The position numbers were made by a program, and so were the translations under genes. Shown here piece by piece: positions 10,237 to 22,359 of a stretch of DNA of 64,000 nucleotides. The first letter of the stretch is position 1, and every line of letters starts with the position of its first letter. The notes beneath the pieces are model-generated. The model did not search any database. It saw only the letters and a list, made by a program, of their open reading frames with translations, and was not told the DNA's origin. The DNA lies in IMG/VR virus record IMGVR_UViG_3300030339_000003, positions 62,001 to 126,000 of that record. The stretch is one strand, 5' to 3'.

Positions 10237-10962
10237 TTATCCCCAAACGCCGTATTGTTCCTGAGCTTTGTTTAATGCCGTAATGGAATCACGAGCTTTA
10301 AACTCAGGAACGTTAACATAGTTACTTGGAGGTGTTGGGTCACCGAAGGTCGGAATGTGCCGTGAATTCAACAGATCATAATAAGACGTGAATTCTGGAA
10401 CCGGGGAACGACTAGCTCCACCGCGCACACCAGGCATGGCCATGATACTTAACATATCGGCCAACCCATTGATTTCAAGATCTTTAGTTTTCTTACCAAG
10501 TGCACGTTGTTCGCTGTTAATGGCATACAGTTTTAATTTGCGGTAATCGTTATAAAGATAAGCACTCACCGATTCTAATCCTTTAATCTCCGCCATTGGA
10601 AGATTACTGTAACCCGAGTGTGTAATCATTAGCTCGTACCACAGTGAATTGTATTCTTGAATCGTTTCGTAGATTTCTACAACGTTTTTCTGAGCTTTGT
10701 TAATAGTAACCGGAGAAGAGTCATTAACACGCTCCATAAGGTCTATCAGCGCTGCAACAGTAATACGACGTTCAATAGGGCGTTCGTAAAACTCGTGGTC
10801 AGGAACCGTGTTTTCATGCATCTTAAATTCACGGTCACGGATTTCATCGGTTGACATTGTGTGAGTAGGCAATATCCACACCGGATATAAACGTTTAGTT
10901 AATATCACCCACAAAACCGATAAACGTTGGCGTATCGCCTTGTGTCTTTCAGGTGTTATCAT
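10237..10962 (-). CDS. Conserved hypothetical protein (phiKZ gp100-like by synteny)
   Basis: 241-aa ORF, translationally coupled within the operon. Confidence 0.55.
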   Translation of the reverse strand: MITPERHKAIRQRLSVLWVILTKRLYPVWILPTHTMSTDEIRDREFKMHENTVPDHEFYERPIERRITVAALIDLMERVNDSSPVTINKAQKNVVEIYETIQEYNSLWYELMITHSGYSNLPMAEIKGLESVSAYLYNDYRKLKLYAINSEQRALGKKTKDLEINGLADMLSIMAMPGVRGGASRSPVPEFTSYYDLLNSRHIPTFGDPTPPSNYVNVPEFKARDSITALNKAQEQYGVWG

Positions 10963-12236
10963 ATCAGTTTACCCATGCGTTTAGATTTGTGTATCATGGC
11001 AATTAAAATTACACCGTAATACAGTTGTTCACGAGGAGTAAGATCCCAATACCCTTCTAACGTATCATTAATCTTTCTCAAGTCAATGATGTTATTTTTG
11101 AATACATTAACAACTAATGATTCAAAAGGTGTTTGTGGATGACCTTGGTAGAATTCGGGAGTAAACAAATAATCAATTGGTTTAGCCGGGATTGGATTGT
11201 CATCACGAATGTTATCATTCCAACTTACCCAACTGGACATATCACGGAAGTTTTCAGGATCCGTTACAACTACACCGTCAAAGTTAGAAGAACGAATGTT
11301 ACCGTGTAAACGCGTGGAATAAAAAATACGCGTATCCAAAATAGCCGCTTGATTGTTACAACGTCTTAAAAGATTCCAGTCGTTGCGAAATAAGACGTCC
11401 CAGATGTTGTAGGTGCCGTGCTGTGCTCCTTTGTTGCCACCGTATTCAAGTGACTGCAACTGAACGCGTGGATACGTTCCTAGGGCTTCTGAACCGACAA
11501 CTGTAGAGAATACCTTAACTAAGTAAGGGTCGTAATAATGTTTATTCCCGATGGTATAGGATAATGTACGCTCGTCTTCCCAATAGAAAGCTTCATACAT
11601 GTAATGCACTAAAGTCGGATACCAGCTATTGAGTTTTTGTTTATAATCAAATTCACCCTGGGTAATGATAGGGTTGCCACCGTTAATGTGTTGGTCGCGG
11701 GTATAAACTAATTCCTCAATAACAAAGCTATCCAGTTCATCAGCAATGGCTTTACTGACAATACCTTCAAGCACATAGTCAATGGTATAAACTTTGTTGG
11801 CTGTCATTTCACCGAATTTAACTTCAGTTACTGTAAACAAGCCAGCGTAGCCATCACCGATATCAGAAATAAACGCATCACCTTTACCCGGGACTAAACC
11901 AAAGTTAGTTAATGCGCTACCTGTTTTACCTGACGTCGCATTAGCAACATTAAAATCAAAAGACAGATCGGATTCTTTTAAGATAACTTTGCGGATACGA
12001 GTGTATTGTTGATAAACGCCACTACCGGGTTGATATGCGTGAGCTTCAGTTCCGCTTTTAGTAACATTACGATAGTACTCGACTAATCGCGGATGGCCAG
12101 GAACCATTGAAAGGATACTGTTTTCGTTCTGATAAACAGAATCTACAATTGGGTGGTGATATTGTTCAGAATAAATCTTTGGTGCTTCCGGTGCCGGTAA
12201 GTTGGAGTCGCCTACCGGAGTGATATTTAAAGCCAT
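10959..12236 (-). CDS. Virion structural protein, putative neck/head-closure protein (phiKZ gp99-like)
   Basis: 425 aa; PGKGDAFISDIGDGYAGLFTVTEV resembles the T4 gp14-type neck pattern (P.xGD....LFxV). Confidence 0.5.
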   Translation of the reverse strand: MALNITPVGDSNLPAPEAPKIYSEQYHHPIVDSVYQNENSILSMVPGHPRLVEYYRNVTKSGTEAHAYQPGSGVYQQYTRIRKVILKESDLSFDFNVANATSGKTGSALTNFGLVPGKGDAFISDIGDGYAGLFTVTEVKFGEMTANKVYTIDYVLEGIVSKAIADELDSFVIEELVYTRDQHINGGNPIITQGEFDYKQKLNSWYPTLVHYMYEAFYWEDERTLSYTIGNKHYYDPYLVKVFSTVVGSEALGTYPRVQLQSLEYGGNKGAQHGTYNIWDVLFRNDWNLLRRCNNQAAILDTRIFYSTRLHGNIRSSNFDGVVVTDPENFRDMSSWVSWNDNIRDDNPIPAKPIDYLFTPEFYQGHPQTPFESLVVNVFKNNIIDLRKINDTLEGYWDLTPREQLYYGVILIAMIHKSKRMGKLI

Positions 12237-12237
12237 G

Positions 12238-13761
12238 TTAATATCCTTTTGGCATTTGAGTTATGTTACCTGCGCATAATCCCAAATACATTTCATAGTT
12301 GTTCCAATGACGTGGAGCATCTACAGGCAAGTTATAAGGCGCATCAGTTTCCCAATCGTCTGGCAGTTTATCCCAAGGGAACCAAGGATAGATGCCTGGG
12401 ATGATTCCTTTATCCCCTGGGTGATCACGTAAGTCATCCCAAATGCTTGGGTCATAGTTGTCAACATCATAATCGATATTGATTAACAGATGATGCATAC
12501 GGCTAGTGGTTGCTGTACGCGTAATGTAAACATTACCTAATTCATCTAAACGTAATTGGGAAGGTAGCACTTGTAAATCAGCGGCATACACTTCAAACAT
12601 AAACGGAGTGAAGTGATGGGTGAATGCAAATGCTCTACGACGGATGATATAATTTTTAGTCGTTTCATTCCAGGTAAAACGAGGAATGTCAAAAATATTG
12701 CACAACAGTTGTTCACCCGGTACGTCATCCACAGACAACTGAACTTTAATAACAGGAGACAAGTTATTGAAGTTTGGTGACTCCCAAGAATCGTGAGCAG
12801 GTAATGACAAATGGAATGGCGCTTGGGTGCTACGATCGTTGTCTGTAAAGGCCGCCCCTGCAACGTATTCAGGGTTAGCACTAGTCGCGTATGGATTAGA
12901 CGTGTCATAGCGCTCACCTTTGTTAGGGATCCATTTATCGTCAATTTGATCTTGGTGAACGGATAACGGATAATCAATATTCCAACCGGTGAATTCGTTA
13001 TGGAAGAAAGTATATGAGAACCCTACTTCGTATTGACCAAAGATTTCTGCTTTTTGTGGTAAACGAATTTCAGGATCTTCGAATTCAACAACAACATCAC
13101 GAACCATGATTGGGAAAGCTAATGTTTTGTAGTTGCCCGCTAAGTTACTAATGATGGTAAATGGATGTTCTTGCATTTCCGTCAAGTAATCCATAAACCC
13201 GTCCGTACGAAGTTTATTCTTAACTAACAGATCGTGAATATTTTTGATTAGCTCAACAATGCCATCGTTTACTGGTAAGTGTGCAGTTGGACTAAAAGTA
13301 AACATGGTTAAGTCACGTGAACGAATGTTATTAATTCTGTTAACGAACTCTTGTGCTTTTTGACGACTGGTAAAATGGGTGATGACTTCAACAACCACTT
13401 GCCGTCCTTCAAATACTGGTGACATGCCTAGTTTAGTTAAAGCGTCTAACCAAAAGTAAGCTTCCGTACGTGAACGACCTTGGTTGTGATAACCCGCATT
13501 AAAAGGAGATGGGTTAACTGTAGCGTCCACATATACTTTATTACGGAAAGTGCCATTCGTATAGAGGGAGTCGGCTGGGTTAGAACCAAAGTCCGCACCT
13601 ACTAATTTGGTAATCTCTGATTCACCACGAAAATAGATGTTCATGCTGTTTTGCAAATCAAAGTGTTTCAATACTAAACGAATCGAGTCATAAATGGTGG
13701 GCTGGGTAAAAGACCGGTAGATCTCCATGGCGTCGACAAACGTGCTGATCATTGCGCTCAT
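12238..13761 (-). CDS. Virion structural protein, putative neck/tail-junction protein (phiKZ gp98-like)
   Basis: 507 aa, first gene after the late promoter motif at 13783-13791. Confidence 0.5.
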   Translation of the reverse strand: MSAMISTFVDAMEIYRSFTQPTIYDSIRLVLKHFDLQNSMNIYFRGESEITKLVGADFGSNPADSLYTNGTFRNKVYVDATVNPSPFNAGYHNQGRSRTEAYFWLDALTKLGMSPVFEGRQVVVEVITHFTSRQKAQEFVNRINNIRSRDLTMFTFSPTAHLPVNDGIVELIKNIHDLLVKNKLRTDGFMDYLTEMQEHPFTIISNLAGNYKTLAFPIMVRDVVVEFEDPEIRLPQKAEIFGQYEVGFSYTFFHNEFTGWNIDYPLSVHQDQIDDKWIPNKGERYDTSNPYATSANPEYVAGAAFTDNDRSTQAPFHLSLPAHDSWESPNFNNLSPVIKVQLSVDDVPGEQLLCNIFDIPRFTWNETTKNYIIRRRAFAFTHHFTPFMFEVYAADLQVLPSQLRLDELGNVYITRTATTSRMHHLLINIDYDVDNYDPSIWDDLRDHPGDKGIIPGIYPWFPWDKLPDDWETDAPYNLPVDAPRHWNNYEMYLGLCAGNITQMPKGY

Positions 13762-13795: not shown

Positions 13796-13826
13796 TATTA
13801 CTAGCGGGGTAACCCCGCTAGTAATA
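13796..13826 (-). terminator. Hairpin terminator
   Basis: 14-bp stem TATTACTAGCGGGG / CCCCGCTAGTAATA. Confidence 0.8.
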
Positions 13827-13835
13827 TATTTATTA

Positions 13836-14588
13836 TTATTCGGTAAGCAATACAGGAAAGCCAGCGCTATCAGTATTTTTGATAGACAACGTAAATAAAC
13901 GTCCTGCTTGAGTTTTAACAACAAACATTGAACAAGAATCAAATTGCTCAATTCCCATTACTTGACCTGCCGCAATATCGTCAATGACGCCAGGTAATAT
14001 GGCTGGGTTATCTTTACACGCTATTGTTAAGGCATTAATATATTTGGATGATAATTTATTGCCGGTGAAAACTTTACTTGTCGGATGAACCATGATGAGG
14101 CTTAGTGCAGCAGCACAGATATCTTCTTTAAAAGAAGGCACAAGGCTTTTGTTACTTGCACTAGATTTCACATGACTTGCCGCAACAACCTTAATATTAC
14201 ATTTACCAAAATATAACAGAGATTTATCTGATACATTTAACGTCAATGTTTTAAAAGGTTGGTTCATCGCATTCAGGTCCACGGTAGTAGTGTCGTTATC
14301 GTAATCCGTATTGCGTATTAAACCTAAACCGGTAGCCTTGCTAAAAGCTTCCCAGACGTCGTTTAACGTGCACAGATCATTAACTGCCACCGTAGGAGGT
14401 TCAATGCCAAATAACCCTTCCAGGTTTGTCTTGTTAAGAATAACAGACGCTTGGACACCATTGAGTGAATAAACAATCTTAGCCGTATTGCGATCGATTG
14501 CATCTACGTATAAAAGTTTACTTCCTTCTGGTAATGACTGAACGAGTAAAGCTTGGTTAGCGATACTAATGTTTTCTAAAGGGGTCAT
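13836..14588 (-). CDS. Beta-rich putative virion protein, paralogous module to 17106-17585
   Basis: 250 aa; motif TGLGLIRNTDYD...LTLNVSDKSLLYFGKCNI; ATGA overlap with the upstream head gene. Confidence 0.55.
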   Translation of the reverse strand: MTPLENISIANQALLVQSLPEGSKLLYVDAIDRNTAKIVYSLNGVQASVILNKTNLEGLFGIEPPTVAVNDLCTLNDVWEAFSKATGLGLIRNTDYDNDTTTVDLNAMNQPFKTLTLNVSDKSLLYFGKCNIKVVAASHVKSSASNKSLVPSFKEDICAAALSLIMVHPTSKVFTGNKLSSKYINALTIACKDNPAILPGVIDDIAAGQVMGIEQFDSCSMFVVKTQAGRLFTLSIKNTDSAGFPVLLTE

Positions 14589-15994
14589 TTGGTTTCCTCT
14601 TTCTTAGGCGCAACAAAAATGCCAGGAGTGATACCTTTGATCGCTTTACTGATTGCATTGATTTCTTTACGTTGGTTAGCAAGCTTGGTCTTCAGTTCAT
14701 TAAAACGATCTTTAAGTTCTTTAGACTTTTCACTAATAGCCGCTTTTTTCACCTGGATAGCATCTTTGTCTTCATCATCAGGACTGCCGGACGTAGTACT
14801 ACTTTCCAGTGCTTTTAAATCAGAATCAATTTGATCAAATTCTTTTTGTAATTCAGTTGATGCATTAAAGCTGGTGGTAAACACTATCATCAGCTTGTCA
14901 ATAACGTTAGAAGCATCAGACACTGTATTCAAACCTGACACTGCAGTAACTGCCGCATCATTACCGGTGTTCTGAGCTAAACGAGTGACACTTGCTTTAA
15001 CGTTGTCAGGAATAGCCGCATCCTTTTCACTTACTGCATTCAATGCTTTCTTATTGGCATCTGCTGCAGTTTTAGTGGCATCAGCAATTTCTTGCAATGA
15101 CTTATCAAAATAGTTTTCTTTCATCGCAACTAAACCATCACGAATCATTTGATAAGCTTTCTGCATACCTGTTTTAACTTTATCCCATACCGCACCTTCT
15201 TGTCCTGCTAAACGATCAAGATTCAAACCGTTACACATTAAGATGCCTGAAAGATAACGTTGGTCATAGGACTGCTGAGCGTAAGGAGTGTACTGTTCCG
15301 CATTAATGAATTGTTCTAATCCACCAATCATTGTACTGTAATGGTCGAGTGTATTAAACGATTCAGTACCTTGGATTTCACCCACAGCAAAGACTTCAGG
15401 ATCAATAGTTGTTTCTTCACCCAGGTCTGTAGGTCTTTCTTCTACGTTCTGACCAAAGTGTTCACCTACGCCTTTAGCTGAACCATACTTAGCCACCATG
15501 AACGTACACAATGCTTGACACAATACACCAATACGATCTAAACGATCAACGATATCGTTTAATTGATCCAGGTCATGTGTTTCATTATCTACACATTCCA
15601 TGTAGCCTGTCTTAAGCGTACAAATGGATTCTTTCAGATGAGCTAATCCCGCAGGTACATCGTATTCAGTACTGGCATTACCTAACGAACATACCGCTGA
15701 TGCAATTACCATAGGACTGTATGGTTTGTTATCAGTAAGGAAGTTATCAATGTAATTACTTAATGCCTGGTTAGTATGTGTTAAACAGTCAATGTAATCT
15801 AGCCAATAGTCGCATGCTATCATTACTGCTGTATTGATTTGTTTCTTAATATCTTTAACTTCACCAAATGTAACGTATGGAGCTATGCTTTCTCTAATAT
15901 CTTTAAACTCATCTGAAGTAAAGATAGTCTCCCTTTCATCCTTATTCAGTACCAGTAAAGTATTGAGTAGCTTCAACAAACTAATATCTATCAT
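14585..15994 (-). CDS. phiKZ-like internal head protein (gp93-gp97 family)
   Basis: Acidic propeptide, sites GTES and GQEG, then amphipathic helix AVWDKVKTGMQKAYQMIRDG. Confidence 0.75.
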   Translation of the reverse strand: MIDISLLKLLNTLLVLNKDERETIFTSDEFKDIRESIAPYVTFGEVKDIKKQINTAVMIACDYWLDYIDCLTHTNQALSNYIDNFLTDNKPYSPMVIASAVCSLGNASTEYDVPAGLAHLKESICTLKTGYMECVDNETHDLDQLNDIVDRLDRIGVLCQALCTFMVAKYGSAKGVGEHFGQNVEERPTDLGEETTIDPEVFAVGEIQGTESFNTLDHYSTMIGGLEQFINAEQYTPYAQQSYDQRYLSGILMCNGLNLDRLAGQEGAVWDKVKTGMQKAYQMIRDGLVAMKENYFDKSLQEIADATKTAADANKKALNAVSEKDAAIPDNVKASVTRLAQNTGNDAAVTAVSGLNTVSDASNVIDKLMIVFTTSFNASTELQKEFDQIDSDLKALESSTTSGSPDDEDKDAIQVKKAAISEKSKELKDRFNELKTKLANQRKEINAISKAIKGITPGIFVAPKKEETK

Positions 15995-16060
15995 TCCTTC
16001 CTCCCCCTTTCAGGTTTAGCGACATTATATCAAAACCCTAGTGAGAAAATAATTATACCT

Positions 16061-16084
16061 TGTTGTGGGGTTTCCCCCACAACA
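16061..16084 (-). terminator. Hairpin terminator
   Basis: 10-bp stem TGTTGTGGGG / CCCCACAACA; GAAA loop on the minus strand. Confidence 0.8.
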
Positions 16085-16178
16085 GGCATTAGGCTTTATA
16101 AGTGATAACCGCTAGGATAACCATTCGTACTATACGGCATTTCACGCACAATACGTTCAGCGCCTACGGTAAAGTCAC

Positions 16179-17060
16179 TTAAGCCTCCTTTTTTCTGAAA
16201 GACTTAATGGTCAGTTTATCAACCATTGATTTGATCAGAGAACGGAAAGTTGTTTTCATGTTCTGAATGATTGAATAAGACTTCATCGTTTCTTTCAAAG
16301 AAGCCAGGCGTTCTCTTACTTCATCGCTGACTGTTTCACTACCGGACTTAATTTTATCTTCGATCTTTTTGATCATTTCGCTGGTTTTGTTAGCGGCCGC
16401 TTTGATGTCAGCAGTAATGATACCGCGGAACTTAACAAAGTAAGCAGCCCACAATTGAGCGCGAATAGAAACAGCTAATGCAATTCCCAGACCTTGTTTA
16501 CGGGCTGTGGCTTGTACGCTTTCCATAACAGCACCCAGCTTTTCGATAGCCGCTTCCAGTTTTTCTTGGAGGTGCATATCGTCAGCCATGATTTTTGCTT
16601 TCACAATACCGGCTTTAGCTTTTTGTACAGCAGACTGACCCAGGGCTTTAGCTTTATCGGCAGCACTAACGATGGCTTCTTTAACAGAAGAAGACATTTC
16701 GGCACCGCTATCAGCTTTTTCCAGCTCAGCAGTTTCAGCTTTGATTTCAGCATCTTCTTTGGTATCTTTTTCTTCTGAGTCTTTGCCAAAGAAGAAACCC
16801 CAAATGCCCGTAAAGATATTACGGATATACTGAATACTTTTACTGAAACCAGTTTTGACAGTTGACCATACAGACTCATTGCCGTGTACTGCATTACCTG
16901 GCAACATACCTGAACCAACCATCGCACCAGCCAGATAACGAACGCAATATGATTCGTTACCGTCCAATGCATCCATTGATCCCTGGATAGACATGGACTC
17001 GTGGGTCTGGTCTAAGTCTTCAGGCAACAGTGGTTCGTCTAAAACAATATCATCTTCCAT
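16179..17060 (-). CDS. phiKZ-like internal head protein
   Basis: Two GNES sites followed by VWSTVKTGFSKSIQYIRNIFTGIWGFFFG; own late promoter motif at 17098-17106. Confidence 0.75.
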   Translation of the reverse strand: MEDDIVLDEPLLPEDLDQTHESMSIQGSMDALDGNESYCVRYLAGAMVGSGMLPGNAVHGNESVWSTVKTGFSKSIQYIRNIFTGIWGFFFGKDSEEKDTKEDAEIKAETAELEKADSGAEMSSSVKEAIVSAADKAKALGQSAVQKAKAGIVKAKIMADDMHLQEKLEAAIEKLGAVMESVQATARKQGLGIALAVSIRAQLWAAYFVKFRGIITADIKAAANKTSEMIKKIEDKIKSGSETVSDEVRERLASLKETMKSYSIIQNMKTTFRSLIKSMVDKLTIKSFRKKEA

Positions 17061-17093
17061 TATAAATCCTTAAAGGGGGTTAATTTGTGTGGT

Positions 17094-17107
17094 GTAAGCA
17101 TAAAATC
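17094..17107 (-). promoter_or_regulatory. Putative late promoter GATTTTATGCTTAC
   Basis: 14-mer identical to 22901-22914. Confidence 0.6.
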
Positions 17108-17585
17108 AGAATACGGCTGTTAACGTACCTGTAAACCAAACAGAGCGTGTAATAGCTACTGATAATGTACGATCGACAATAGAAAGATCAACATCATCGA
17201 TAGAAAGAGACACCAAACCGGTTAACCAGATTAAGAGATTAAACAGACGTGTAGGTTCATCAGAAGACGTTGGGATTACATTAACTAATCCGTTCACTGA
17301 GCCGTTTGTAAAGGTCGTAGAGACATCAAAACGTTTATCCAGTAAACTGACCACTGGTTGGGTAAAATCATTACCTGCGTAATCTGAGAGATCTACAGGG
17401 TGAAACGTAAGCGCGCTCAAATCTACTTTGTCAATTTTAACCAAGTTAGACTTGTTAGTACGGTCGTAAGCAATAAAACGTTTATCGTCCAGGCCAACCA
17501 TAACAGGTGATGTTAATGGATTGCCTGTTTTAACGCTGTTTACTGCCTTTAAGATGGTTCCAATGTCAATACGGTTTATATTCAT
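17106..17585 (-). CDS. Beta-rich putative virion protein, paralogous module to 13836-14588
   Basis: 159 aa; TGLVSLSIDDVD...LSVAITRSVWFTGTL; ATGA overlap with the upstream head gene. Confidence 0.55.
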   Translation of the reverse strand: MNINRIDIGTILKAVNSVKTGNPLTSPVMVGLDDKRFIAYDRTNKSNLVKIDKVDLSALTFHPVDLSDYAGNDFTQPVVSLLDKRFDVSTTFTNGSVNGLVNVIPTSSDEPTRLFNLLIWLTGLVSLSIDDVDLSIVDRTLSVAITRSVWFTGTLTAVF

Positions 17586-18688
17586 TTAAATGCCTTTTTC
17601 ATGATGTCATGTGCTGCAGTGTCTGCACGCTGTAATGCACTTAACCCATTCTTAACAAATGAAATATAACTTACCAATGAACCTACGGCAGCAGTCATCG
17701 TGTAAGCTTCCGCTGTTGACATCCCTTCCAGATCGTTATCAGTTTTCAGTTTAATCCCAAACAACGCAGATTCTTGTTTAGAAATATCAGCAATCGCCAT
17801 TAACATGTCGGCGGTCTTAGCGAGTTTCTTCGCCAGATCGTCGTAGCGCGCCTTACTTACTTTAAACTTAGCGTCTTTAACCTCAGTAGGTTTAATCGGC
17901 ACTACGCTGAACTGGAGCACTTTACGCTTAGGTTCCGTCTGAATATCAAACCACGTAGAACCCACCAGCTTAGCATAACTGAAACGTTTCTTTTCAGCAG
18001 CTGTACCTTCGGCTACGGTTGTACCTAGATCACGAGCAATGGTGTTACCAAAGTTAACAACATCAATTAACTTAACTGATTTGTCTTGTACTTTAGCAAA
18101 CAATGATTTAGCTTCTGGGAATGAATCTTTAATAGACTTCATTTTACCTAAAACAAAATCAAGTTCTTTGGTTAACCAATCCAGGTTTTCAGGATAGGAC
18201 TTAAGCTTGTGACTATCTAAAATTAATTTAGCATTACCTGGGTAAGCAAGTTCTTTATCGAACTCAATTTCCCCTGCTTTAATCTTAGCTTCCAAACGAC
18301 CTAAGTCAGTTTTAGATTTCTTACCAAAGCCAAAGAATACTTCGCCCAGCCATTTGAAGAAGTTACCGATCATAGAGAAGAAACGTTTAATCAATGTCCA
18401 CAGCGTACTAAACAAGCCTTCGCTGCCATCGATTATAGATTGACCCTTAGGTAACAGGTGTTGGCTAAACTTTAAGTACAATGATTCAGTACCCGTCAGT
18501 TCGTCTTTATCTTTCTTAGACAATTCGTCATGCTTAACTTTAATAGTTTGCTTGCCATCATCTAAGAAATCATCAACACTTTTCTTATCCATTTCATAAA
18601 GCTGTTCAATAGTCGGGGTAGTAACGTAGCGACCATTGATATCCTCGGACTTTACATTATGATCAAAATCTTTAAATAAAGTAGTCAT
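17582..18688 (-). CDS. phiKZ-like internal head protein
   Basis: GTES and GSEG sites, then LFSTLWTLIKRFFSMIGNFFKWLGEVFFG. Confidence 0.75.
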   Translation of the reverse strand: MTTLFKDFDHNVKSEDINGRYVTTPTIEQLYEMDKKSVDDFLDDGKQTIKVKHDELSKKDKDELTGTESLYLKFSQHLLPKGQSIIDGSEGLFSTLWTLIKRFFSMIGNFFKWLGEVFFGFGKKSKTDLGRLEAKIKAGEIEFDKELAYPGNAKLILDSHKLKSYPENLDWLTKELDFVLGKMKSIKDSFPEAKSLFAKVQDKSVKLIDVVNFGNTIARDLGTTVAEGTAAEKKRFSYAKLVGSTWFDIQTEPKRKVLQFSVVPIKPTEVKDAKFKVSKARYDDLAKKLAKTADMLMAIADISKQESALFGIKLKTDNDLEGMSTAEAYTMTAAVGSLVSYISFVKNGLSALQRADTAAHDIMKKAFK

Positions 18689-18708
18689 AAATAAAAAAGC
18701 TCCGTTAA

Positions 18709-18736
18709 TACTAGCCTGGTTTTACCCAGGCTAGTA
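18709..18736 (-). terminator. Hairpin terminator
   Basis: 11-bp stem TACTAGCCTGG / CCAGGCTAGTA. Confidence 0.75.
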
Positions 18737-18758
18737 TAAGGTTTTAGAACGTTAACAC

Positions 18759-20006
18759 TTAAACGTGTGCAGCGATACCGTCGATCACAGCGCCACAGAT
18801 GTCAGCAGCCAGGCTGTTAACAGTTTTGGTCAGAGTTGCAGCAGAAGATGCTACAGCTTTAACCAGTGCAACTTTCTTGCCTGCATCAGCATCAGCGCCA
18901 GCGGCATTGATATAGCCAACCAGTTTGTCGCGTTTTGCAGCTGCGAATTTCTGATCAACTTTAGCAGTTTCCAGAGATTTCAGATGTTTCTCAACACCGG
19001 TCAGTGCAGTTTTCAGAGCGCCAACGTTGTTAACTTTAGGAGCCGCTTCACCTTTAGACAGGGTAGCAAACTTCTCAGTTTTAACAGCGCGCAGGCCCAG
19101 TGAACGTGCAGCTTTAGCAGCATCTTCCAGGGAATCGGTTTTGCCTTCGCTGGTGAACACCAGGCGCAGACCAGCGAATTCGCCGATGTAGTTGGATTTA
19201 TCACCTTCTTTCTTCTCTGCAGTTGCAGCGAATTCAGTGATTTTGGATTTCATGGTAGAAACCAATGCGCCGTAAGCGGTATTGAATTCACCCAGGCCGA
19301 TTTCGCCATCGAGCAGGTTAGCGTAAGCGCCAGTTGCTACTGCAGCGTCAGTCAGTGCCAGAGCTTTCTCGAACAGACCTTTTTCGCCGTAGTTGACGTA
19401 GCCGTTCCAGCTGCCGAGTTTGATTTTCTCTTTAACTTTAGCGCCTTCTTTATCCAGCGATACGCGGACGTTAGCGGCTTTCTTCTGCAGACCTTTAACT
19501 TTGTTAAACAGGCCAGTGAAGAATGCAACAACACCGTTGAAGATACGACGGATGAATTCCAGGACAGCTGCACCAGCGCCTTTCACTTTATCCATCAGAC
19601 CTTCCATACCGTCGCGAGCAACAGTTTCGGTAGTAGAAGCATCATAAAGATCTTCTGCGCCGACACGTGATGCGCCTTTAGAAGGTGCGCCGCCCAGGTG
19701 ACGAGCTGACAGTTTAGAAGCGTTGTTGTACAGGGATGCGAATGCACGGCTGTCGAAGTTACCAGATTTCAGCATGGATTCCATACCTTCAACGGCTTCA
19801 ACAACTTCTTCGCTTGCTTCTTCAATGGCGTCGATCTGGTCAGCCATTTCTTCGATCACTTCGGACTGTTCCTGAATTTCAGCAGTCGCTTCGGCAACTT
19901 CAGCGCGAATTTCTTGCATCACTTCAACAACAGCTTCAGTACCAGCAGCGCCTTCTTCGGACAGACCCAGTTCTTCAGTTCCAGCATACAGTAATGAATT
20001 AAACAT
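18759..20006 (-). CDS. Abundant internal head protein (phiKZ gp93-like)
   Basis: Acidic N-terminus with multiple S/A/G-x-E sites (GTEE, GMES, GAED, GMEG); amphipathic helix EFIRRIFNGVVAFFTG; strong codon bias. Confidence 0.85.
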   Translation of the reverse strand: MFNSLLYAGTEELGLSEEGAAGTEAVVEVMQEIRAEVAEATAEIQEQSEVIEEMADQIDAIEEASEEVVEAVEGMESMLKSGNFDSRAFASLYNNASKLSARHLGGAPSKGASRVGAEDLYDASTTETVARDGMEGLMDKVKGAGAAVLEFIRRIFNGVVAFFTGLFNKVKGLQKKAANVRVSLDKEGAKVKEKIKLGSWNGYVNYGEKGLFEKALALTDAAVATGAYANLLDGEIGLGEFNTAYGALVSTMKSKITEFAATAEKKEGDKSNYIGEFAGLRLVFTSEGKTDSLEDAAKAARSLGLRAVKTEKFATLSKGEAAPKVNNVGALKTALTGVEKHLKSLETAKVDQKFAAAKRDKLVGYINAAGADADAGKKVALVKAVASSAATLTKTVNSLAADICGAVIDGIAAHV

Positions 20007-20060
20007 TGATAACTCCTGATAAATGATTTTGTTTTTACTTAAGTAAAAAAGTTTATTTAA

Positions 20061-21044
20061 TTAAATAACTTTTGAAAAGATACCCAAGACGTCTTGAATA
20101 TACTTGTCAACGTAGTTCACTACGCGCGGAGTGAATCCACTATAAAATGTAAGTGCAATCGCATCACCCTTTAAAGTGTTTTCCGCCTCGTGTATAATTT
20201 GGTTCCCTACGTTCTGGATTTTGCTCAATCCAGTATCTGCTTCTTTAACGACGTCAGACCAGGCTTTAATGAAATCAAGATAAGTGGCATAAGATTCTTT
20301 AACTTTTTGGTGCACGCCATTTAACTTATTAATTTGATTTAAGATGTGTTGGACTTCGCTTTTAGAAACCGACAAAGTATGCGATTCACCTGCGGGTTTA
20401 TCTCCGGACATAGAATACTCGATATTACCATCAGTATCCTTGAACTTAATCACCCGGCCAGCAGGTAATACATGAGATAAAGCCCAACCGTTATTTTTAT
20501 TGGGTAGTGTTAAAGGAGGGTAAGTAATCCCTTCGAACTCTTTAACAATCGCCATAACAGCGCTGGTGTTTGACGCACTTTTGTATTTGCGAATAGTGAC
20601 CAGCTGATGACCAAGGTAGTCGTTCACCTTACCCATGTGAGCCGTCAACAGTTCTGCCGTCTTAATCAGTTCTTCCAAGTCACGATCAAAATCTGACCAT
20701 TGGCCTGTGGATGTGATTGAACCAACTAATACCGTTGAAAGAGTAAAGTCATAATGCTCTTCTTTCAACGCCCCATTAATTTTGCTGGACAACATTTTGT
20801 TATCGTCAAAAACTTTGTGCAGTTGTACACCCAGTTTTTTGATGCCGACACTAAACAGGTTAAAGGATTTTCCACCTACCCATTGTGTGACAGATAACAG
20901 ACCGGTACCCAGGTCTTTCAGGTTGTCCACAAAATCTTCATTACCAACACGTGAGTCAATAGTATTTCTAATACTAGAAGCTAACGTGGTAAGTTCTGCA
21001 TGATTATTTAAACAAACGATACGGTGTTCACGAATATCATTCAT
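20061..21044 (-). CDS. Internal head protein family member
   Basis: VGNEDFVDNLK processing-site context; lies in the head operon. Confidence 0.65.
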   Translation of the reverse strand: MNDIREHRIVCLNNHAELTTLASSIRNTIDSRVGNEDFVDNLKDLGTGLLSVTQWVGGKSFNLFSVGIKKLGVQLHKVFDDNKMLSSKINGALKEEHYDFTLSTVLVGSITSTGQWSDFDRDLEELIKTAELLTAHMGKVNDYLGHQLVTIRKYKSASNTSAVMAIVKEFEGITYPPLTLPNKNNGWALSHVLPAGRVIKFKDTDGNIEYSMSGDKPAGESHTLSVSKSEVQHILNQINKLNGVHQKVKESYATYLDFIKAWSDVVKEADTGLSKIQNVGNQIIHEAENTLKGDAIALTFYSGFTPRVVNYVDKYIQDVLGIFSKVI

Positions 21045-22359
21045 TTTTACCTTCTTTCACAAAATTAATGGTGTCGTTACACAGGCCCGCTACAGCGTTC
21101 AAGGTTAACACCAGATAACGCGTGAAATCAGAGGTGATGTTCAGCAGGTCTTGTTGGTTCTTACGTACCAGCATAGAGTACATCGCTAATACGCGTTGTT
21201 TCAGAACTGGGTCACATTCTAGTTTCAGAATATTGTCACCAATTTCTTCATAGTCGCGATCATTGATGCGATGCTTGTTTGCTTTTTGACAAACTTGTAA
21301 CCAGCTTTCCAGTAACTTAACGGAAAGTTGAGAAACGTGTTTAATGGTGTCGCTGCTCAGAGTATCGATTTCTTGTTCGATATCCAGGAAGTCTGCAGTT
21401 TCACGTTTGTTCAGACGTACACCAATATCGGTAATACGTGAATCAAACCAATCGTCAATTGCTTTGGTAGAATCAACCTTTAAAGGTGTCTTCCAACGTG
21501 TATCAACTAAATGACGATCACCCATTAGATTGACTGAACGCATAACACGCAGCCATGGAACATTGCGAGGTGAAATATCAACCTTGCATTCTTTGAAACC
21601 AGGGTTATTCAAAATAACCGAAGTTTTCATCAGCTGAGCGATAACCTGATCATCGGTCTGCAGACCTTCAAAGCCGGAGAACACTGACATAATCTGCGTC
21701 AATTCTTTTTCAGAATAGTCGTAGTAGTTAATGGTCAGCGCAGTTGTGGTTTTGTAAAGGTTCAGGATTTGGTTATACCAGTCTTCCTTTACTTCGCCAT
21801 TAACTTTCAGCAGGTTGTATAAACGAGCCGATAAATTAAAACGTTCCAGACCTTCCGGGAATTGTTTCAATTGCTTAGTTGCGGTATCGATCAAACGAAA
21901 ACGTTCAACCAAAGACTCGGCATCTTCAGTCACCAGGGTATACGCTTCCTGGAACTTAGCAGCAATGGTCTTAGTGAAAGTCTTGGTAGATTCAACAACG
22001 TTGTCTAAAAAGCCCTCACAAGCCGCTACACGAGACGCAATGAATACGCTTGGGCGCAGAGTCAAACCAAAAGCTTCAGCGCCTTCAACGCGGGTAGCAT
22101 TGAATTCAACATCAGAACCATCGGTAGTGATAACACGCAGTTCGGATAACTGACCGTCAATTTCAATGGCGTCTTCAGGAGACAGCTCGTGGGGTTGCTT
22201 GTTTAAAAGCAGATCTTTGATCGCTTCAACTTTGTTAGCAGAACCCAACACTTCGTTTGTGATCAAATTTAAATCACGGGATGACTGCGCAACTTCCAAT
22301 AACTCAGCGGACTTAACAACTGAGATAGCAGCCAGATCACTATCCAGGTCATTTGACAT
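21037..22359 (-). CDS. Internal head protein (phiKZ gp92-like by synteny)
   Basis: 440 aa; EGAEA and AACEGFLD sites. Confidence 0.65.
   Translation of the reverse strand: MSNDLDSDLAAISVVKSAELLEVAQSSRDLNLITNEVLGSANKVEAIKDLLLNKQPHELSPEDAIEIDGQLSELRVITTDGSDVEFNATRVEGAEAFGLTLRPSVFIASRVAACEGFLDNVVESTKTFTKTIAAKFQEAYTLVTEDAESLVERFRLIDTATKQLKQFPEGLERFNLSARLYNLLKVNGEVKEDWYNQILNLYKTTTALTINYYDYSEKELTQIMSVFSGFEGLQTDDQVIAQLMKTSVILNNPGFKECKVDISPRNVPWLRVMRSVNLMGDRHLVDTRWKTPLKVDSTKAIDDWFDSRITDIGVRLNKRETADFLDIEQEIDTLSSDTIKHVSQLSVKLLESWLQVCQKANKHRINDRDYEEIGDNILKLECDPVLKQRVLAMYSMLVRKNQQDLLNITSDFTRYLVLTLNAVAGLCNDTINFVKEGKNE

What the first reader, a model, noticed from the sequence alone, without database searches (positions are those of the whole stretch)
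13836..18688. Repeated two-gene unit: internal head paralogue coupled to a beta-rich module
Twice, a head-family gene ends with an ATGA overlap into a small non-family gene: 18688-17582 into 17585-17106, and 15994-14585 into 14588-13836. The two partner proteins share a motif, roughly (N/D)L..L...TGL.(S)L...D.D...L(T/S)(L/V).(V/I)...S(L/V)(L/W)(Y/F).G..., so they look paralogous. The head gene between them (17060-16179) ends in a perfect SD (AAGGAGG) with a GTG that hits a stop after four codons, possibly a decayed third partner. This suggests a duplicated cargo-plus-partner cassette (chaperone, adaptor or surface module).
Basis: partly seen in the sequence, partly recalled or inferred. Interest (0 to 1): 0.6.

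Follow-up and report, generated by a model that had tools for sequence, protein, structure and literature searches.

The report
Two divergent DUF7941 genes among head genes
In this phiKZ-like giant phage, the two small "partner" genes that follow internal-head-protein genes are distant copies of one module (DUF7941), which is known from related phages as a baseplate-anchored filament protein; the gene order is old and conserved, but nothing shows that they bind the head proteins.

Summary
Both ATGA overlaps, all coordinates and the AAGGAGG/GTG mini-ORF are as described.

The window comes from a 231-kb phiKZ-like jumbo phage. The upstream genes (P0001, P0003, P0004) are remote paralogues of PF12699 internal head proteins.

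The two partners are related, but only remotely. BLASTP finds nothing and profile comparison is weak. The AlphaFold models of P0002 (whole) and P0005 (residues 1-136) have the same order of secondary-structure elements. Both have the same top solved-structure hit, a chain of the phiKZ outer peripheral baseplate. The P0005 family matches canonical Goslar DUF7941 proteins (hhalign probability 96%). P0005 is a full module (N-domain, linker, C-domain); P0002 is N-domain only.

The gene order is kept in about 40 loci, including EL, RisingSun, OBP and PS1. In one clade both partners erode while the head genes stay. This argues against an obligate chaperone pair.

The "decayed third partner" is not supported. 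That site is an invariant A_AAA_AAG heptamer followed by a conserved 30-codon -1 frame, so it is a candidate programmed frameshift.

Verdict: new, divergent members of a known family; their function is inferred by analogy.

The parts
18759..20006 (-). P0006, the main internal head protein (PF12699 phiKZ_IP). It is context and the reference member of the head family.
   Evidence: Pfam PF12699 at E 7.6e-33, 114.7 bits. phrog_5750 'internal head protein' at E 1.9e-75.
17582..18688 (-). P0001 ('X'), a remote PF12699-family paralogue. It carries a G-S-E-G motif like the other paralogues.
   Evidence: It has no Pfam hit. The ortholog profile against the IHP ortholog profile gives hhalign probability 96.8%, E 2.9e-10.
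17106..17585 (-). P0002 ('S1'), 159 aa. It is a DUF7941-like N-terminal module only, with a disordered internal loop at residues 88-102. Its start overlaps the stop of P0001 (ATGA).
   Evidence: The model has pLDDT 76. Its top hit among 48,161 PDB chains is 9xqd_0 (Z 5.3, 118 aa). In BFVD it hits S2 orthologs and DUF7941 proteins. hhalign against DUF7941 gives P 3.5e-4 over 86 columns. Its nearest ESM Atlas clusters are all DUF7941.
16179..17060 (-). P0003 ('H3'), 293 aa. It is a head-family paralogue closest to the C-terminal half of P0004. It is present only in the window's own subclade.
   Evidence: hhalign of Hpre against H3w gives probability 97.7%, E 1.7e-12. It is absent from EL-type loci.
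16188..16194 (-). A_AAA_AAG heptamer in the 0 frame (AGA AAA AAG), three codons before the P0003 stop. It is a candidate -1 slippery site.
   Evidence: It is invariant in all six loci that have an H3 gene. Only 2 in-frame copies occur in the genome's 72,601 codons.
16096..16188 (-). A -1-frame extension of 30 codons plus TAA, which would follow the slippery site.
   Evidence: It is exactly 30 codons in all six loci. Between the window and L003, the last 20 codons differ by 8 synonymous and 4 non-synonymous changes, counted by me from the alignment. L003 has no in-frame start codon before the conserved part.
16055..16089 (-). GC-rich hairpin followed by a U-rich stretch, right after the extension's stop. 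It is probably a terminator or processing site between P0003 and P0004.
   Evidence: Fold energy -26.6 kcal/mol, z -4.4. The stem is conserved with changes on both sides in relatives.
14585..15994 (-). P0004 ('H4'), 469 aa, a head-family paralogue with invariant G-x-E motifs.
   Evidence: phrog_27616 at E 1.4e-44. hhalign of IHP against Hpre gives probability 93.7%. G264 and E266 are invariant in 29 orthologs.
13836..14588 (-). P0005 ('S2'), 250 aa. It is a full DUF7941-like module: N-domain 1-136, linker about 144-149, C-domain 153-237. Its start overlaps the stop of P0004 (ATGA).
   Evidence: The model has pLDDT 91. Foldseek against PDB gives 9xqd_0 at E 7.3e-7 as the only hit at E 0.001 or better; VIA-align gives Z 7.2 over 121 aa. 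hhalign against Goslar DUF7941 paralogues gives probability 96%, E about 1e-9. Pfam DUF7941 is sub-threshold at 15.1 bits. In the ESM Atlas, 25 of the 30 nearest clusters are DUF7941.
13796..13826 (-). 14-bp GC-rich hairpin between P0005 and the tail-terminator gene.
   Evidence: z -4.3.
12238..13761 (-). P0007, a homologue of the Goslar gp51 tail terminator. It is context and the anchor used for synteny.
   Evidence: tblastn hits Goslar gp51. The Goslar cryo-EM paper names gp51 as the tail terminator.
10959..12236 (-). Homologue of the Goslar gp50 stopper, a head-tail joining protein (context).
   Evidence: The L003 ortholog carries PF24214/PF24215. Its position matches Goslar gp50.

Best explanation
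P0002 and P0005 are two divergent members of the DUF7941 module family, which is specific to phiKZ-like jumbo phages. P0005 has the full layout (N-terminal globular domain, short flexible linker, C-terminal globular domain). P0002 is an N-domain-only form with an inserted loop.

They are remote paralogues of each other. They sit at fixed places in a conserved late block: PF12699 head paralogues, S1, more head paralogues, S2, tail terminator, stopper.

By analogy with Goslar gp22/gp23 and phiKZ gp126/gp127, they most likely are virion-associated subunits that join head to tail. In that model the linker and C-domain of one protomer dock on the N-domain of the next, and the chain is anchored on the outside of the particle (peripheral baseplate in phiKZ). 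P0002 would act as an N-domain-only end or anchor piece for P0005.

Shown here: the fold, the homology, the gene order, and the joint erosion of both genes in one clade.

Inferred only: virion location, oligomerisation, and any S1-S2 contact.

The stop/start overlaps with the upstream head genes reflect co-expression in a tightly packed operon. They are not a demonstrated protein partnership.
For: Fold:
- The order of secondary-structure elements is the same in P0002 (H8-18, E27-31, E36-41, E48-52, H56-60 ... H110-122, E132-137, E140-145, E151-158) and in P0005 residues 1-136 (H9-17, E24-30, E35-42, E45-52, H56-60 ... H75-86, E102-104, E113-118, E129-136).
- Both models have the same best solved-structure match, 9xqd chain 0 of the phiKZ outer peripheral baseplate.
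- The Goslar preprint says only the gp127 N-domain, a DUF7941 protein, is modelled in that region.
- The P0002 model hits S2 orthologs of RisingSun, PS1 and EL in BFVD. The two hit lists share many jumbo-phage virion proteins.

Sequence:
- S2 profile against Goslar DUF7941 paralogues: probability 96%, E about 1e-9.
- S1 against DUF7941: P 3.5e-4 over 86 columns.
- S1 against S2: P 1.4e-3.
- Controls: 0.16-0.86.
- 12 of 31 S2 orthologs give sub-threshold Pfam DUF7941 hits, best 4.9e-5.
- The ESM Atlas neighbours of both proteins are DUF7941 clusters.

Layout: P0005 has N-domain, low-confidence linker and C-domain, as described for Goslar gp22.

Gene order: it is conserved in about 40 loci, and every junction lies between -26 and +12 nt.

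Erosion: in one clade of the terminator tree both S1 and S2 are shortened or lost in different ways, while X and H4 remain.
Against: - Neither protein reaches Pfam's DUF7941 cut-off.
- For P0002 the sequence evidence alone is weak (hhalign probability 27-37%). Its model is of middling confidence (pLDDT 76), and Z 5.3 is within the range that unrelated folds can reach.
- No data place either protein in a virion. OBP gp114-117 are annotated only as hypothetical while their neighbours are 'virion structural'. The shallow RisingSun lysate proteome did not list gp70 or gp74, though it also missed the tail terminator.
- Canonical DUF7941 genes in Goslar lie among tail and baseplate genes, not inside the PF12699 block.
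- Oligomerisation was not tested.
Confidence: 0.6

Rival explanations
1. Each small protein is a dedicated partner (chaperone, adaptor or co-packaged subunit) of the head-family protein encoded just upstream. The pair arose by duplication of a two-gene cassette.
For: The X-S1 and H-S2 adjacency and tight junctions are kept across very divergent phages. Both partners share one fold. Goslar offers a precedent for neighbouring, co-injected proteins predicted to bind each other (gp60/gp61).
Against: X and H4 genes persist where S1 and S2 are lost or cut down. About half of all same-strand junctions in this genome are equally tight. S2 is much closer to canonical DUF7941 than to S1, and X is not the closest paralogue of H4, so a unit duplication is not visible. 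RisingSun has extra head paralogues without partners.
Confidence: 0.2
2. S1 and S2 are non-virion assembly factors that merely reuse the DUF7941 fold. They would act transiently during head or neck assembly.
For: OBP gp114-117 are not annotated as virion proteins although their neighbours are. The genes sit between head-content genes and neck genes.
Against: Record annotations are an unreliable guide. EL's tail-terminator homologue is also annotated as 'hypothetical'. Every DUF7941 protein studied so far is virion-associated.
Confidence: 0.15
3. The resemblance between P0002 and P0005 is chance or convergence on a common small alpha/beta arrangement. On this view they are not homologous.
For: BLASTP finds nothing. 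HMM searches do not link them at significant E-values. The Z-scores are middling.
Against: Out of 48,161 chains, both models pick the same top chain, and the match covers the whole domain in each. The element order agrees over the whole domain, and the sequence segments are colinear. The P0002 model retrieves S2 orthologs. The Atlas neighbours agree.
Confidence: 0.05

Closest known systems
Goslar gp22 / gp23 (DUF7941, PF25613), bioRxiv 10.64898/2026.04.21.720040
   Same: P0005 has the gp22 layout (N-domain, flexible linker, C-domain). P0002 lacks the C-domain, as gp23 does. The N-domains are homologous by profile comparison (S2) and by fold (both). The family is restricted to phiKZ-like jumbo phages.
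   Different: Both proteins fall below Pfam's cut-off. They are encoded inside the PF12699 head-protein block rather than among tail genes. They are not adjacent to each other. Filament formation, copy number and virion location are unknown here. This genome and EL, Joad, OBP and PS1 have no canonical DUF7941 gene by the Pfam model.
phiKZ gp126 / gp127 (PDB 9XQD outer peripheral baseplate, Nat Commun 2026, PMC13250141)
   Same: It is the best solved-structure match of both models over the whole N-domain. It is a two-protein set, predicted in the Goslar preprint to form a head-to-tail heterodimer.
   Different: That chain 0 is gp127 is my inference from the two papers; it is not read from the PDB entry. 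Sequence identity is 13-18%. phiKZ gp126 and gp127 are neighbouring genes near tail genes.
phiKZ-type internal head proteins (PF12699; phiKZ gp92-97, Goslar gp53-58)
   Same: P0006 and P0008 pass the Pfam model. P0001, P0003 and P0004 join the family by profile-profile comparison. All share a G-x-E motif region, and the block lies upstream of the tail terminator as in Goslar.
   Different: The Goslar block has no DUF7941-like genes interleaved. Goslar gp52, at the position of S2, is unrelated.
dnaX-type -1 frameshift site A_AAA_AAG; T7 gene 10A/10B C-terminal extension by -1 frameshift (my own knowledge, not checked here)
   Same: The heptamer is identical and in frame, close to the end of a head-protein gene. 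A short conserved -1 extension follows.
   Different: No conserved stimulatory hairpin or upstream SD-like element was found. No product has been observed.

Membership tests
DUF7941 (PF25613) | Score above Pfam's gathering cut-off (27 bits) | tested here: not met
   P0005 scores 15.1 bits, E 0.017. P0002 has no hit. 12 of 31 S2 orthologs hit below the cut-off; 0 of 29 S1 orthologs hit at all.
DUF7941 (PF25613) | Homology of the N-terminal globular domain to canonical members | tested here: met
   For S2, hhalign against eight Goslar paralogues gives probability 96%, E 1-2e-9, over 84-89 columns. For S1 the result is only suggestive: P 3.5e-4, probability 27-37%, over 86 columns.
DUF7941 (PF25613) | Fold of the N-domain as in the solved phiKZ peripheral-baseplate chain | tested here: met
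   9xqd_0 is the top hit for both. S2: Z 7.2, rmsd 4.2, 121 aa, Foldseek E 7.3e-7. S1: Z 5.3, rmsd 4.4, 118 aa.
DUF7941 (PF25613) | Layout of N-domain, disordered linker and C-terminal globular domain (gp22 type), or N-domain without C-domain (gp23 type) | tested here: met
   P0005 model: domain 1-136, low pLDDT at 144-149, domain 153-237. P0002 is a single domain. The Atlas structure match covers P0005 residues 5-232 on an 870-aa DUF7941 tail protein.
DUF7941 (PF25613) | Head-to-tail oligomers or filaments | not tested
No homo-oligomer or S1-S2 prediction was run.
DUF7941 (PF25613) | Virion association at the peripheral baseplate | not testable with these tools
   No proteome or map of this phage is at hand. 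The OBP and EL record annotations and the RisingSun lysate MS are uninformative.
PF12699 phiKZ internal head proteins (for the upstream genes) | Pfam model above cut-off | tested here: not met
   P0001, P0003 and P0004 have no PF12699 hit. P0006 scores 114.7 bits and P0008 scores 27.7 bits against a cut-off of 27.
PF12699 phiKZ internal head proteins (for the upstream genes) | Profile-level homology to bona fide members in the same block | tested here: met
   IHP-X 96.8%, IHP-Hpre 93.7%, X-H3 96.2%, Hpre-H3 97.7%, P8-X 96.0%.
Programmed -1 ribosomal frameshift (for the P0003 3' end) | In-frame X_XXY_YYZ slippery heptamer, conserved | tested here: met
   A_AAA_AAG is invariant in six loci. It is one of only 2 in-frame copies in the genome.
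Programmed -1 ribosomal frameshift (for the P0003 3' end) | Conserved -1 ORF with coding-type substitution pattern | tested here: met
   The extension is 30 codons in all six loci. The pattern is 8 synonymous to 4 non-synonymous changes between the window and L003, counted by me from the alignment, and there is no upstream start codon in L003.
Programmed -1 ribosomal frameshift (for the P0003 3' end) | Stimulatory RNA element near the site | tested here: inconclusive
   The consensus fold is weak at -6.6 kcal/mol. The SD-like AAGGAGG is present only in the window.
Programmed -1 ribosomal frameshift (for the P0003 3' end) | Frameshifted protein observed | not testable with these tools
   This needs mass spectrometry, ribosome profiling or a reporter assay.

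The most novel reading that the evidence does not exclude
In the EL/RisingSun/OBP branch of phiKZ-like phages, the DUF7941 module has been taken into the head-content programme. On this reading S1 and S2 are made in fixed ratio with their upstream PF12699-type proteins and travel with them, either packaged or ejected, as a cargo-adaptor pair. A third paralogue (P0003) gets its own C-terminal tag by a programmed -1 frameshift instead of a partner gene.
Probability: 0.12. Interest if true: 0.7.

Novelty: new member of a known kind. Interest (0 to 1): 0.42.

Why it matters
DUF7941 was described only in 2026, as a chimallivirus-specific filament module thought to aid host finding.

This analysis extends the family to a large branch (EL, RisingSun, OBP, PS1 and the window's phage) where the Pfam model finds no member. 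In that branch the only detectable relatives are a minimal pair in a fixed place between head-content and neck genes. That gives a small, tractable two-protein system for testing how the module oligomerises and where it is anchored.

The joint erosion of both genes in one clade marks them as an accessory function, not a core one.

The candidate -1 frameshift at the end of an internal-head paralogue would be a new case of recoding in jumbo-phage head proteins. It can be tested with one peptide.

Tried and rejected
- BLASTP of P0002 against P0005: nothing.
- megablast of the region and tblastn of P0002 against the phage collection: no match, since close kin are withheld.
- Word search: it found only 3-4 close relatives of each partner, so families were built from syntenic loci instead.
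- HMM searches of the whole 231-kb genome with the S1, S2 and Goslar-DUF7941 profiles: no further paralogue. S2 is the only hit of the DUF7941 profile, E 1.1e-4.
- Profile searches of solved-structure sequences: nothing relevant.
- Goslar gp52, at the position of S2: unrelated.
- S1 profile in the records that lack S1: no copy elsewhere, but three of the four records are fragments.
- Complex prediction of P0004 with P0005: score 0.00, verdict 'no answer'. This counts neither for nor against binding.
- Conserved RNA structure downstream of the heptamer: none convincing.
- The -1 extension peptide has no look-alike elsewhere in the genome or loci.
- RisingSun lysate proteome: too shallow to say anything about gp70 or gp74.
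- The tree is the quick search, not the finished careful one.
- Not used: the large representative search, read-laying, and any alternative genetic code.


Full report
**What is there**

The window is part of a 231,366-bp phage genome with terminal repeats. Its nearest named relatives by the tail-terminator gene are Erwinia phages Joad and RisingSun and the Pseudomonas EL group.

All genes of the finding lie on the - strand at the stated coordinates. Both ATGA stop/start overlaps are real.

Such overlaps are common in this genome. 12 of 193 same-strand neighbour pairs have ATGA, and 93 of 193 lie within 12 nt of each other. The overlap alone carries little weight.

**The upstream genes**

P0006 (18759-20006) is a clear PF12699 internal head protein, and P0008 just passes the model. 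P0001, P0003 and P0004 have no Pfam hit.

I built ortholog profiles by gene position from about 40 loci. These link the three genes to the family:

| Comparison | hhalign probability |
|---|---|
| IHP vs X | 96.8% |
| IHP vs gene before S2 | 93.7% |
| X vs H3 | 96.2% |
| H4 vs H3 | 97.7% |

The similarity centres on a shared G-x-E-(G/S/D) motif region visible in the translations. In the H4 orthologs G264 and E266 are invariant. From my own knowledge, this resembles the S/A/G-X-E sites cut by the phiKZ prohead protease. Cleavage was not tested here.

So 'head-family gene' is right. P0003 is closest to the C-terminal half of P0004, and it exists only in the window's own subclade.

**The two partners**

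BLASTP finds no similarity between P0002 and P0005. I collected syntenic loci with the conserved neighbour P0007 and built families of 34 S1 and 36 S2 sequences.

hhalign gives two colinear weak segments, P about 0.0015 and 0.03. Eight of nine unrelated families give 0.16-0.86; one S2 control gave 0.0055.

AlphaFold models from these alignments gave pLDDT 76 for P0002 and 91 for P0005. They have the same order of elements: helix, three strands, short helix, variable insert, helix, three strands. This spans all of P0002 and residues 1-136 of P0005. P0005 continues with a low-confidence linker (144-149) and a second domain (153-237).

Structure searches agree:
- Of 48,161 solved chains, both models have the same best match, 9xqd chain 0 from the phiKZ outer peripheral baseplate. 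For P0005: Z 7.2, 121 residues. For P0002: Z 5.3, 118 residues.
- Foldseek gives this chain as the only PDB hit of P0005 at E 0.001 or better, E 7.3e-7.
- In BFVD the P0002 model retrieves the S2 orthologs of RisingSun, PS1 and EL. The two hit lists share many jumbo-phage virion proteins.

**Which family**

[quoted passage not shown] Gp23 lacks the C-domain.

According to that preprint:
- The module is predicted to assemble head to tail, and purified gp22 forms filaments.
- Several members carry carbohydrate-binding or hydrolase domains.
- In the phiKZ atlas only the gp127 N-domain is modelled in the outer peripheral baseplate.

P0005 gives a sub-threshold Pfam DUF7941 hit, as do 12 of 31 orthologs.

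I extracted eight canonical Goslar paralogues:
- The S2 profile matches them at probability 96%, E about 1e-9.
- The S1 profile matches the same region at P 3.5e-4 over 86 columns.
- The ESM Atlas independently puts both proteins next to DUF7941 clusters.

I conclude that P0005 is a divergent full DUF7941 module, and that P0002 is very probably an N-domain-only relative. This genome, EL, Joad, OBP and PS1 have no canonical DUF7941 gene by the Pfam model. Their only weak hits are the S2 orthologs.

**Conservation**

The gene order is P440, P8, IHP, X, S1, (S3 in the OBP/PS1 branch), (extra head paralogues), H, S2, tail terminator, stopper. It holds in all loci examined, including EL (gp64-gp68), OBP (gp113-118), RisingSun/Joad (gp69-75), PS1 and Kc263. 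Every X-S1 and H-S2 junction lies between -26 and +12 nt.

Goslar has the same frame (PF12699 block, terminator gp51, stopper gp50) but no DUF7941-like gene inside it.

In one well-supported clade of a quick terminator tree, both partners erode:
- S1 is absent and S2 is N-domain only (L025/26).
- S1 is 117 aa and S2 is N-domain only (L031/32).
- S1 is absent and S2 is a 93-aa C-domain remnant (L022/23).
- Both are gone (L019).

In all of these, X and H4 stay full length. This links S1 with S2, and it argues against an obligate role for the neighbouring head proteins. These contigs are partly fragments, so relocation cannot be excluded.

**Mechanism**

Shown: fold, homology, layout, order, co-erosion.

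Inferred by analogy: S2 protomers join head to tail through linker and C-domain onto the next N-domain. S1, lacking a C-domain, could only accept and so would serve as an end or anchor. The assembly would be virion-associated. Its site (baseplate periphery as in phiKZ, or elsewhere) is unknown.

**The third claim**

The AAGGAGG/GTG site is not a decayed partner. The heptamer A_AAA_AAG (window 16194-16188, 0 frame AGA AAA AAG) is invariant in all six loci with an H3 gene. It is followed in each by a -1 frame of exactly 30 codons.

The -1 peptide is conserved between the window and L003, with 8 synonymous and 4 non-synonymous changes in its last 20 codons (my count from the alignment). L003 has no start codon upstream of the conserved part. 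Only two in-frame copies of the heptamer exist in the genome.

The SD-like string is not conserved, and no conserved stimulatory fold was found. A stable hairpin (16089-16055) follows the extension's stop. A similar one (13826-13796) follows P0005, so P0004 and P0005 lie between two hairpins.

This is a candidate programmed -1 frameshift and needs experimental proof.

**Verdict**

The partners are new, divergent members of a recently described family.

Noticed in passing
window 16096-16194 (- strand); L003 11390-11490; L013/L014/L037/L039 at the H3 3' ends: Candidate programmed -1 ribosomal frameshift. An invariant in-frame A_AAA_AAG lies 2-3 codons before the stop of the H3 head paralogue. 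It is followed by a conserved 30-codon -1 ORF with mostly synonymous changes.
   Followed up: partly
window 16055-16089 and 13796-13826 (- strand): Two stable GC-rich hairpins of the form ...GGGG-loop-CCCC... (z about -4.4 and -4.3) bracket the P0004-P0005 pair. The first is conserved in relatives with changes on both stem sides. They are likely terminators or processing sites.
   Followed up: partly
window 13836-22359: P0001, P0003, P0004, P0006, P0008: All five head-family paralogues share a G-x-E-(G/S/D)-hydrophobic motif, where their similarity is centred. G264 and E266 are invariant in 29 H4 orthologs. It resembles prohead-protease cleavage sites of phiKZ-like phages (my own knowledge).
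   Followed up: no
alignment A5 (H4 orthologs), columns before the G-x-E motif: Most EL-type H4 orthologs carry a Cys-rich stretch (consensus G-x-E-C-x5-C-x-C-G-C-x-L-D-H) that the window's P0004 lacks. It may be a metal-binding insert.
   Followed up: no
L001 5515-6060, L002 5558-6166, L008 7439-8050, L009 7598-8173, L012 6604-7188: The OBP/PS1/Kc263 branch has an extra small gene (S3, 181-203 aa) overlapping the S1 stop. It is unrelated to S1, S2 or DUF7941 by profile comparison.
   Followed up: partly
L019 versus L022/L023: Near-identical phages (terminator proteins almost the same) differ by presence or absence of the 93-aa S2 remnant, which points to a recent deletion of about 280 nt.
   Followed up: partly
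whole genome G000; records of EL, Joad, OBP, PS1: No canonical DUF7941 gene passes the Pfam model in this branch of phiKZ-like phages, whereas Goslar has ten matches, nine above the cut-off. The 'fibre cloud' family may be reduced to the S1/S2 pair here, or it may have diverged beyond the model.
   Followed up: partly
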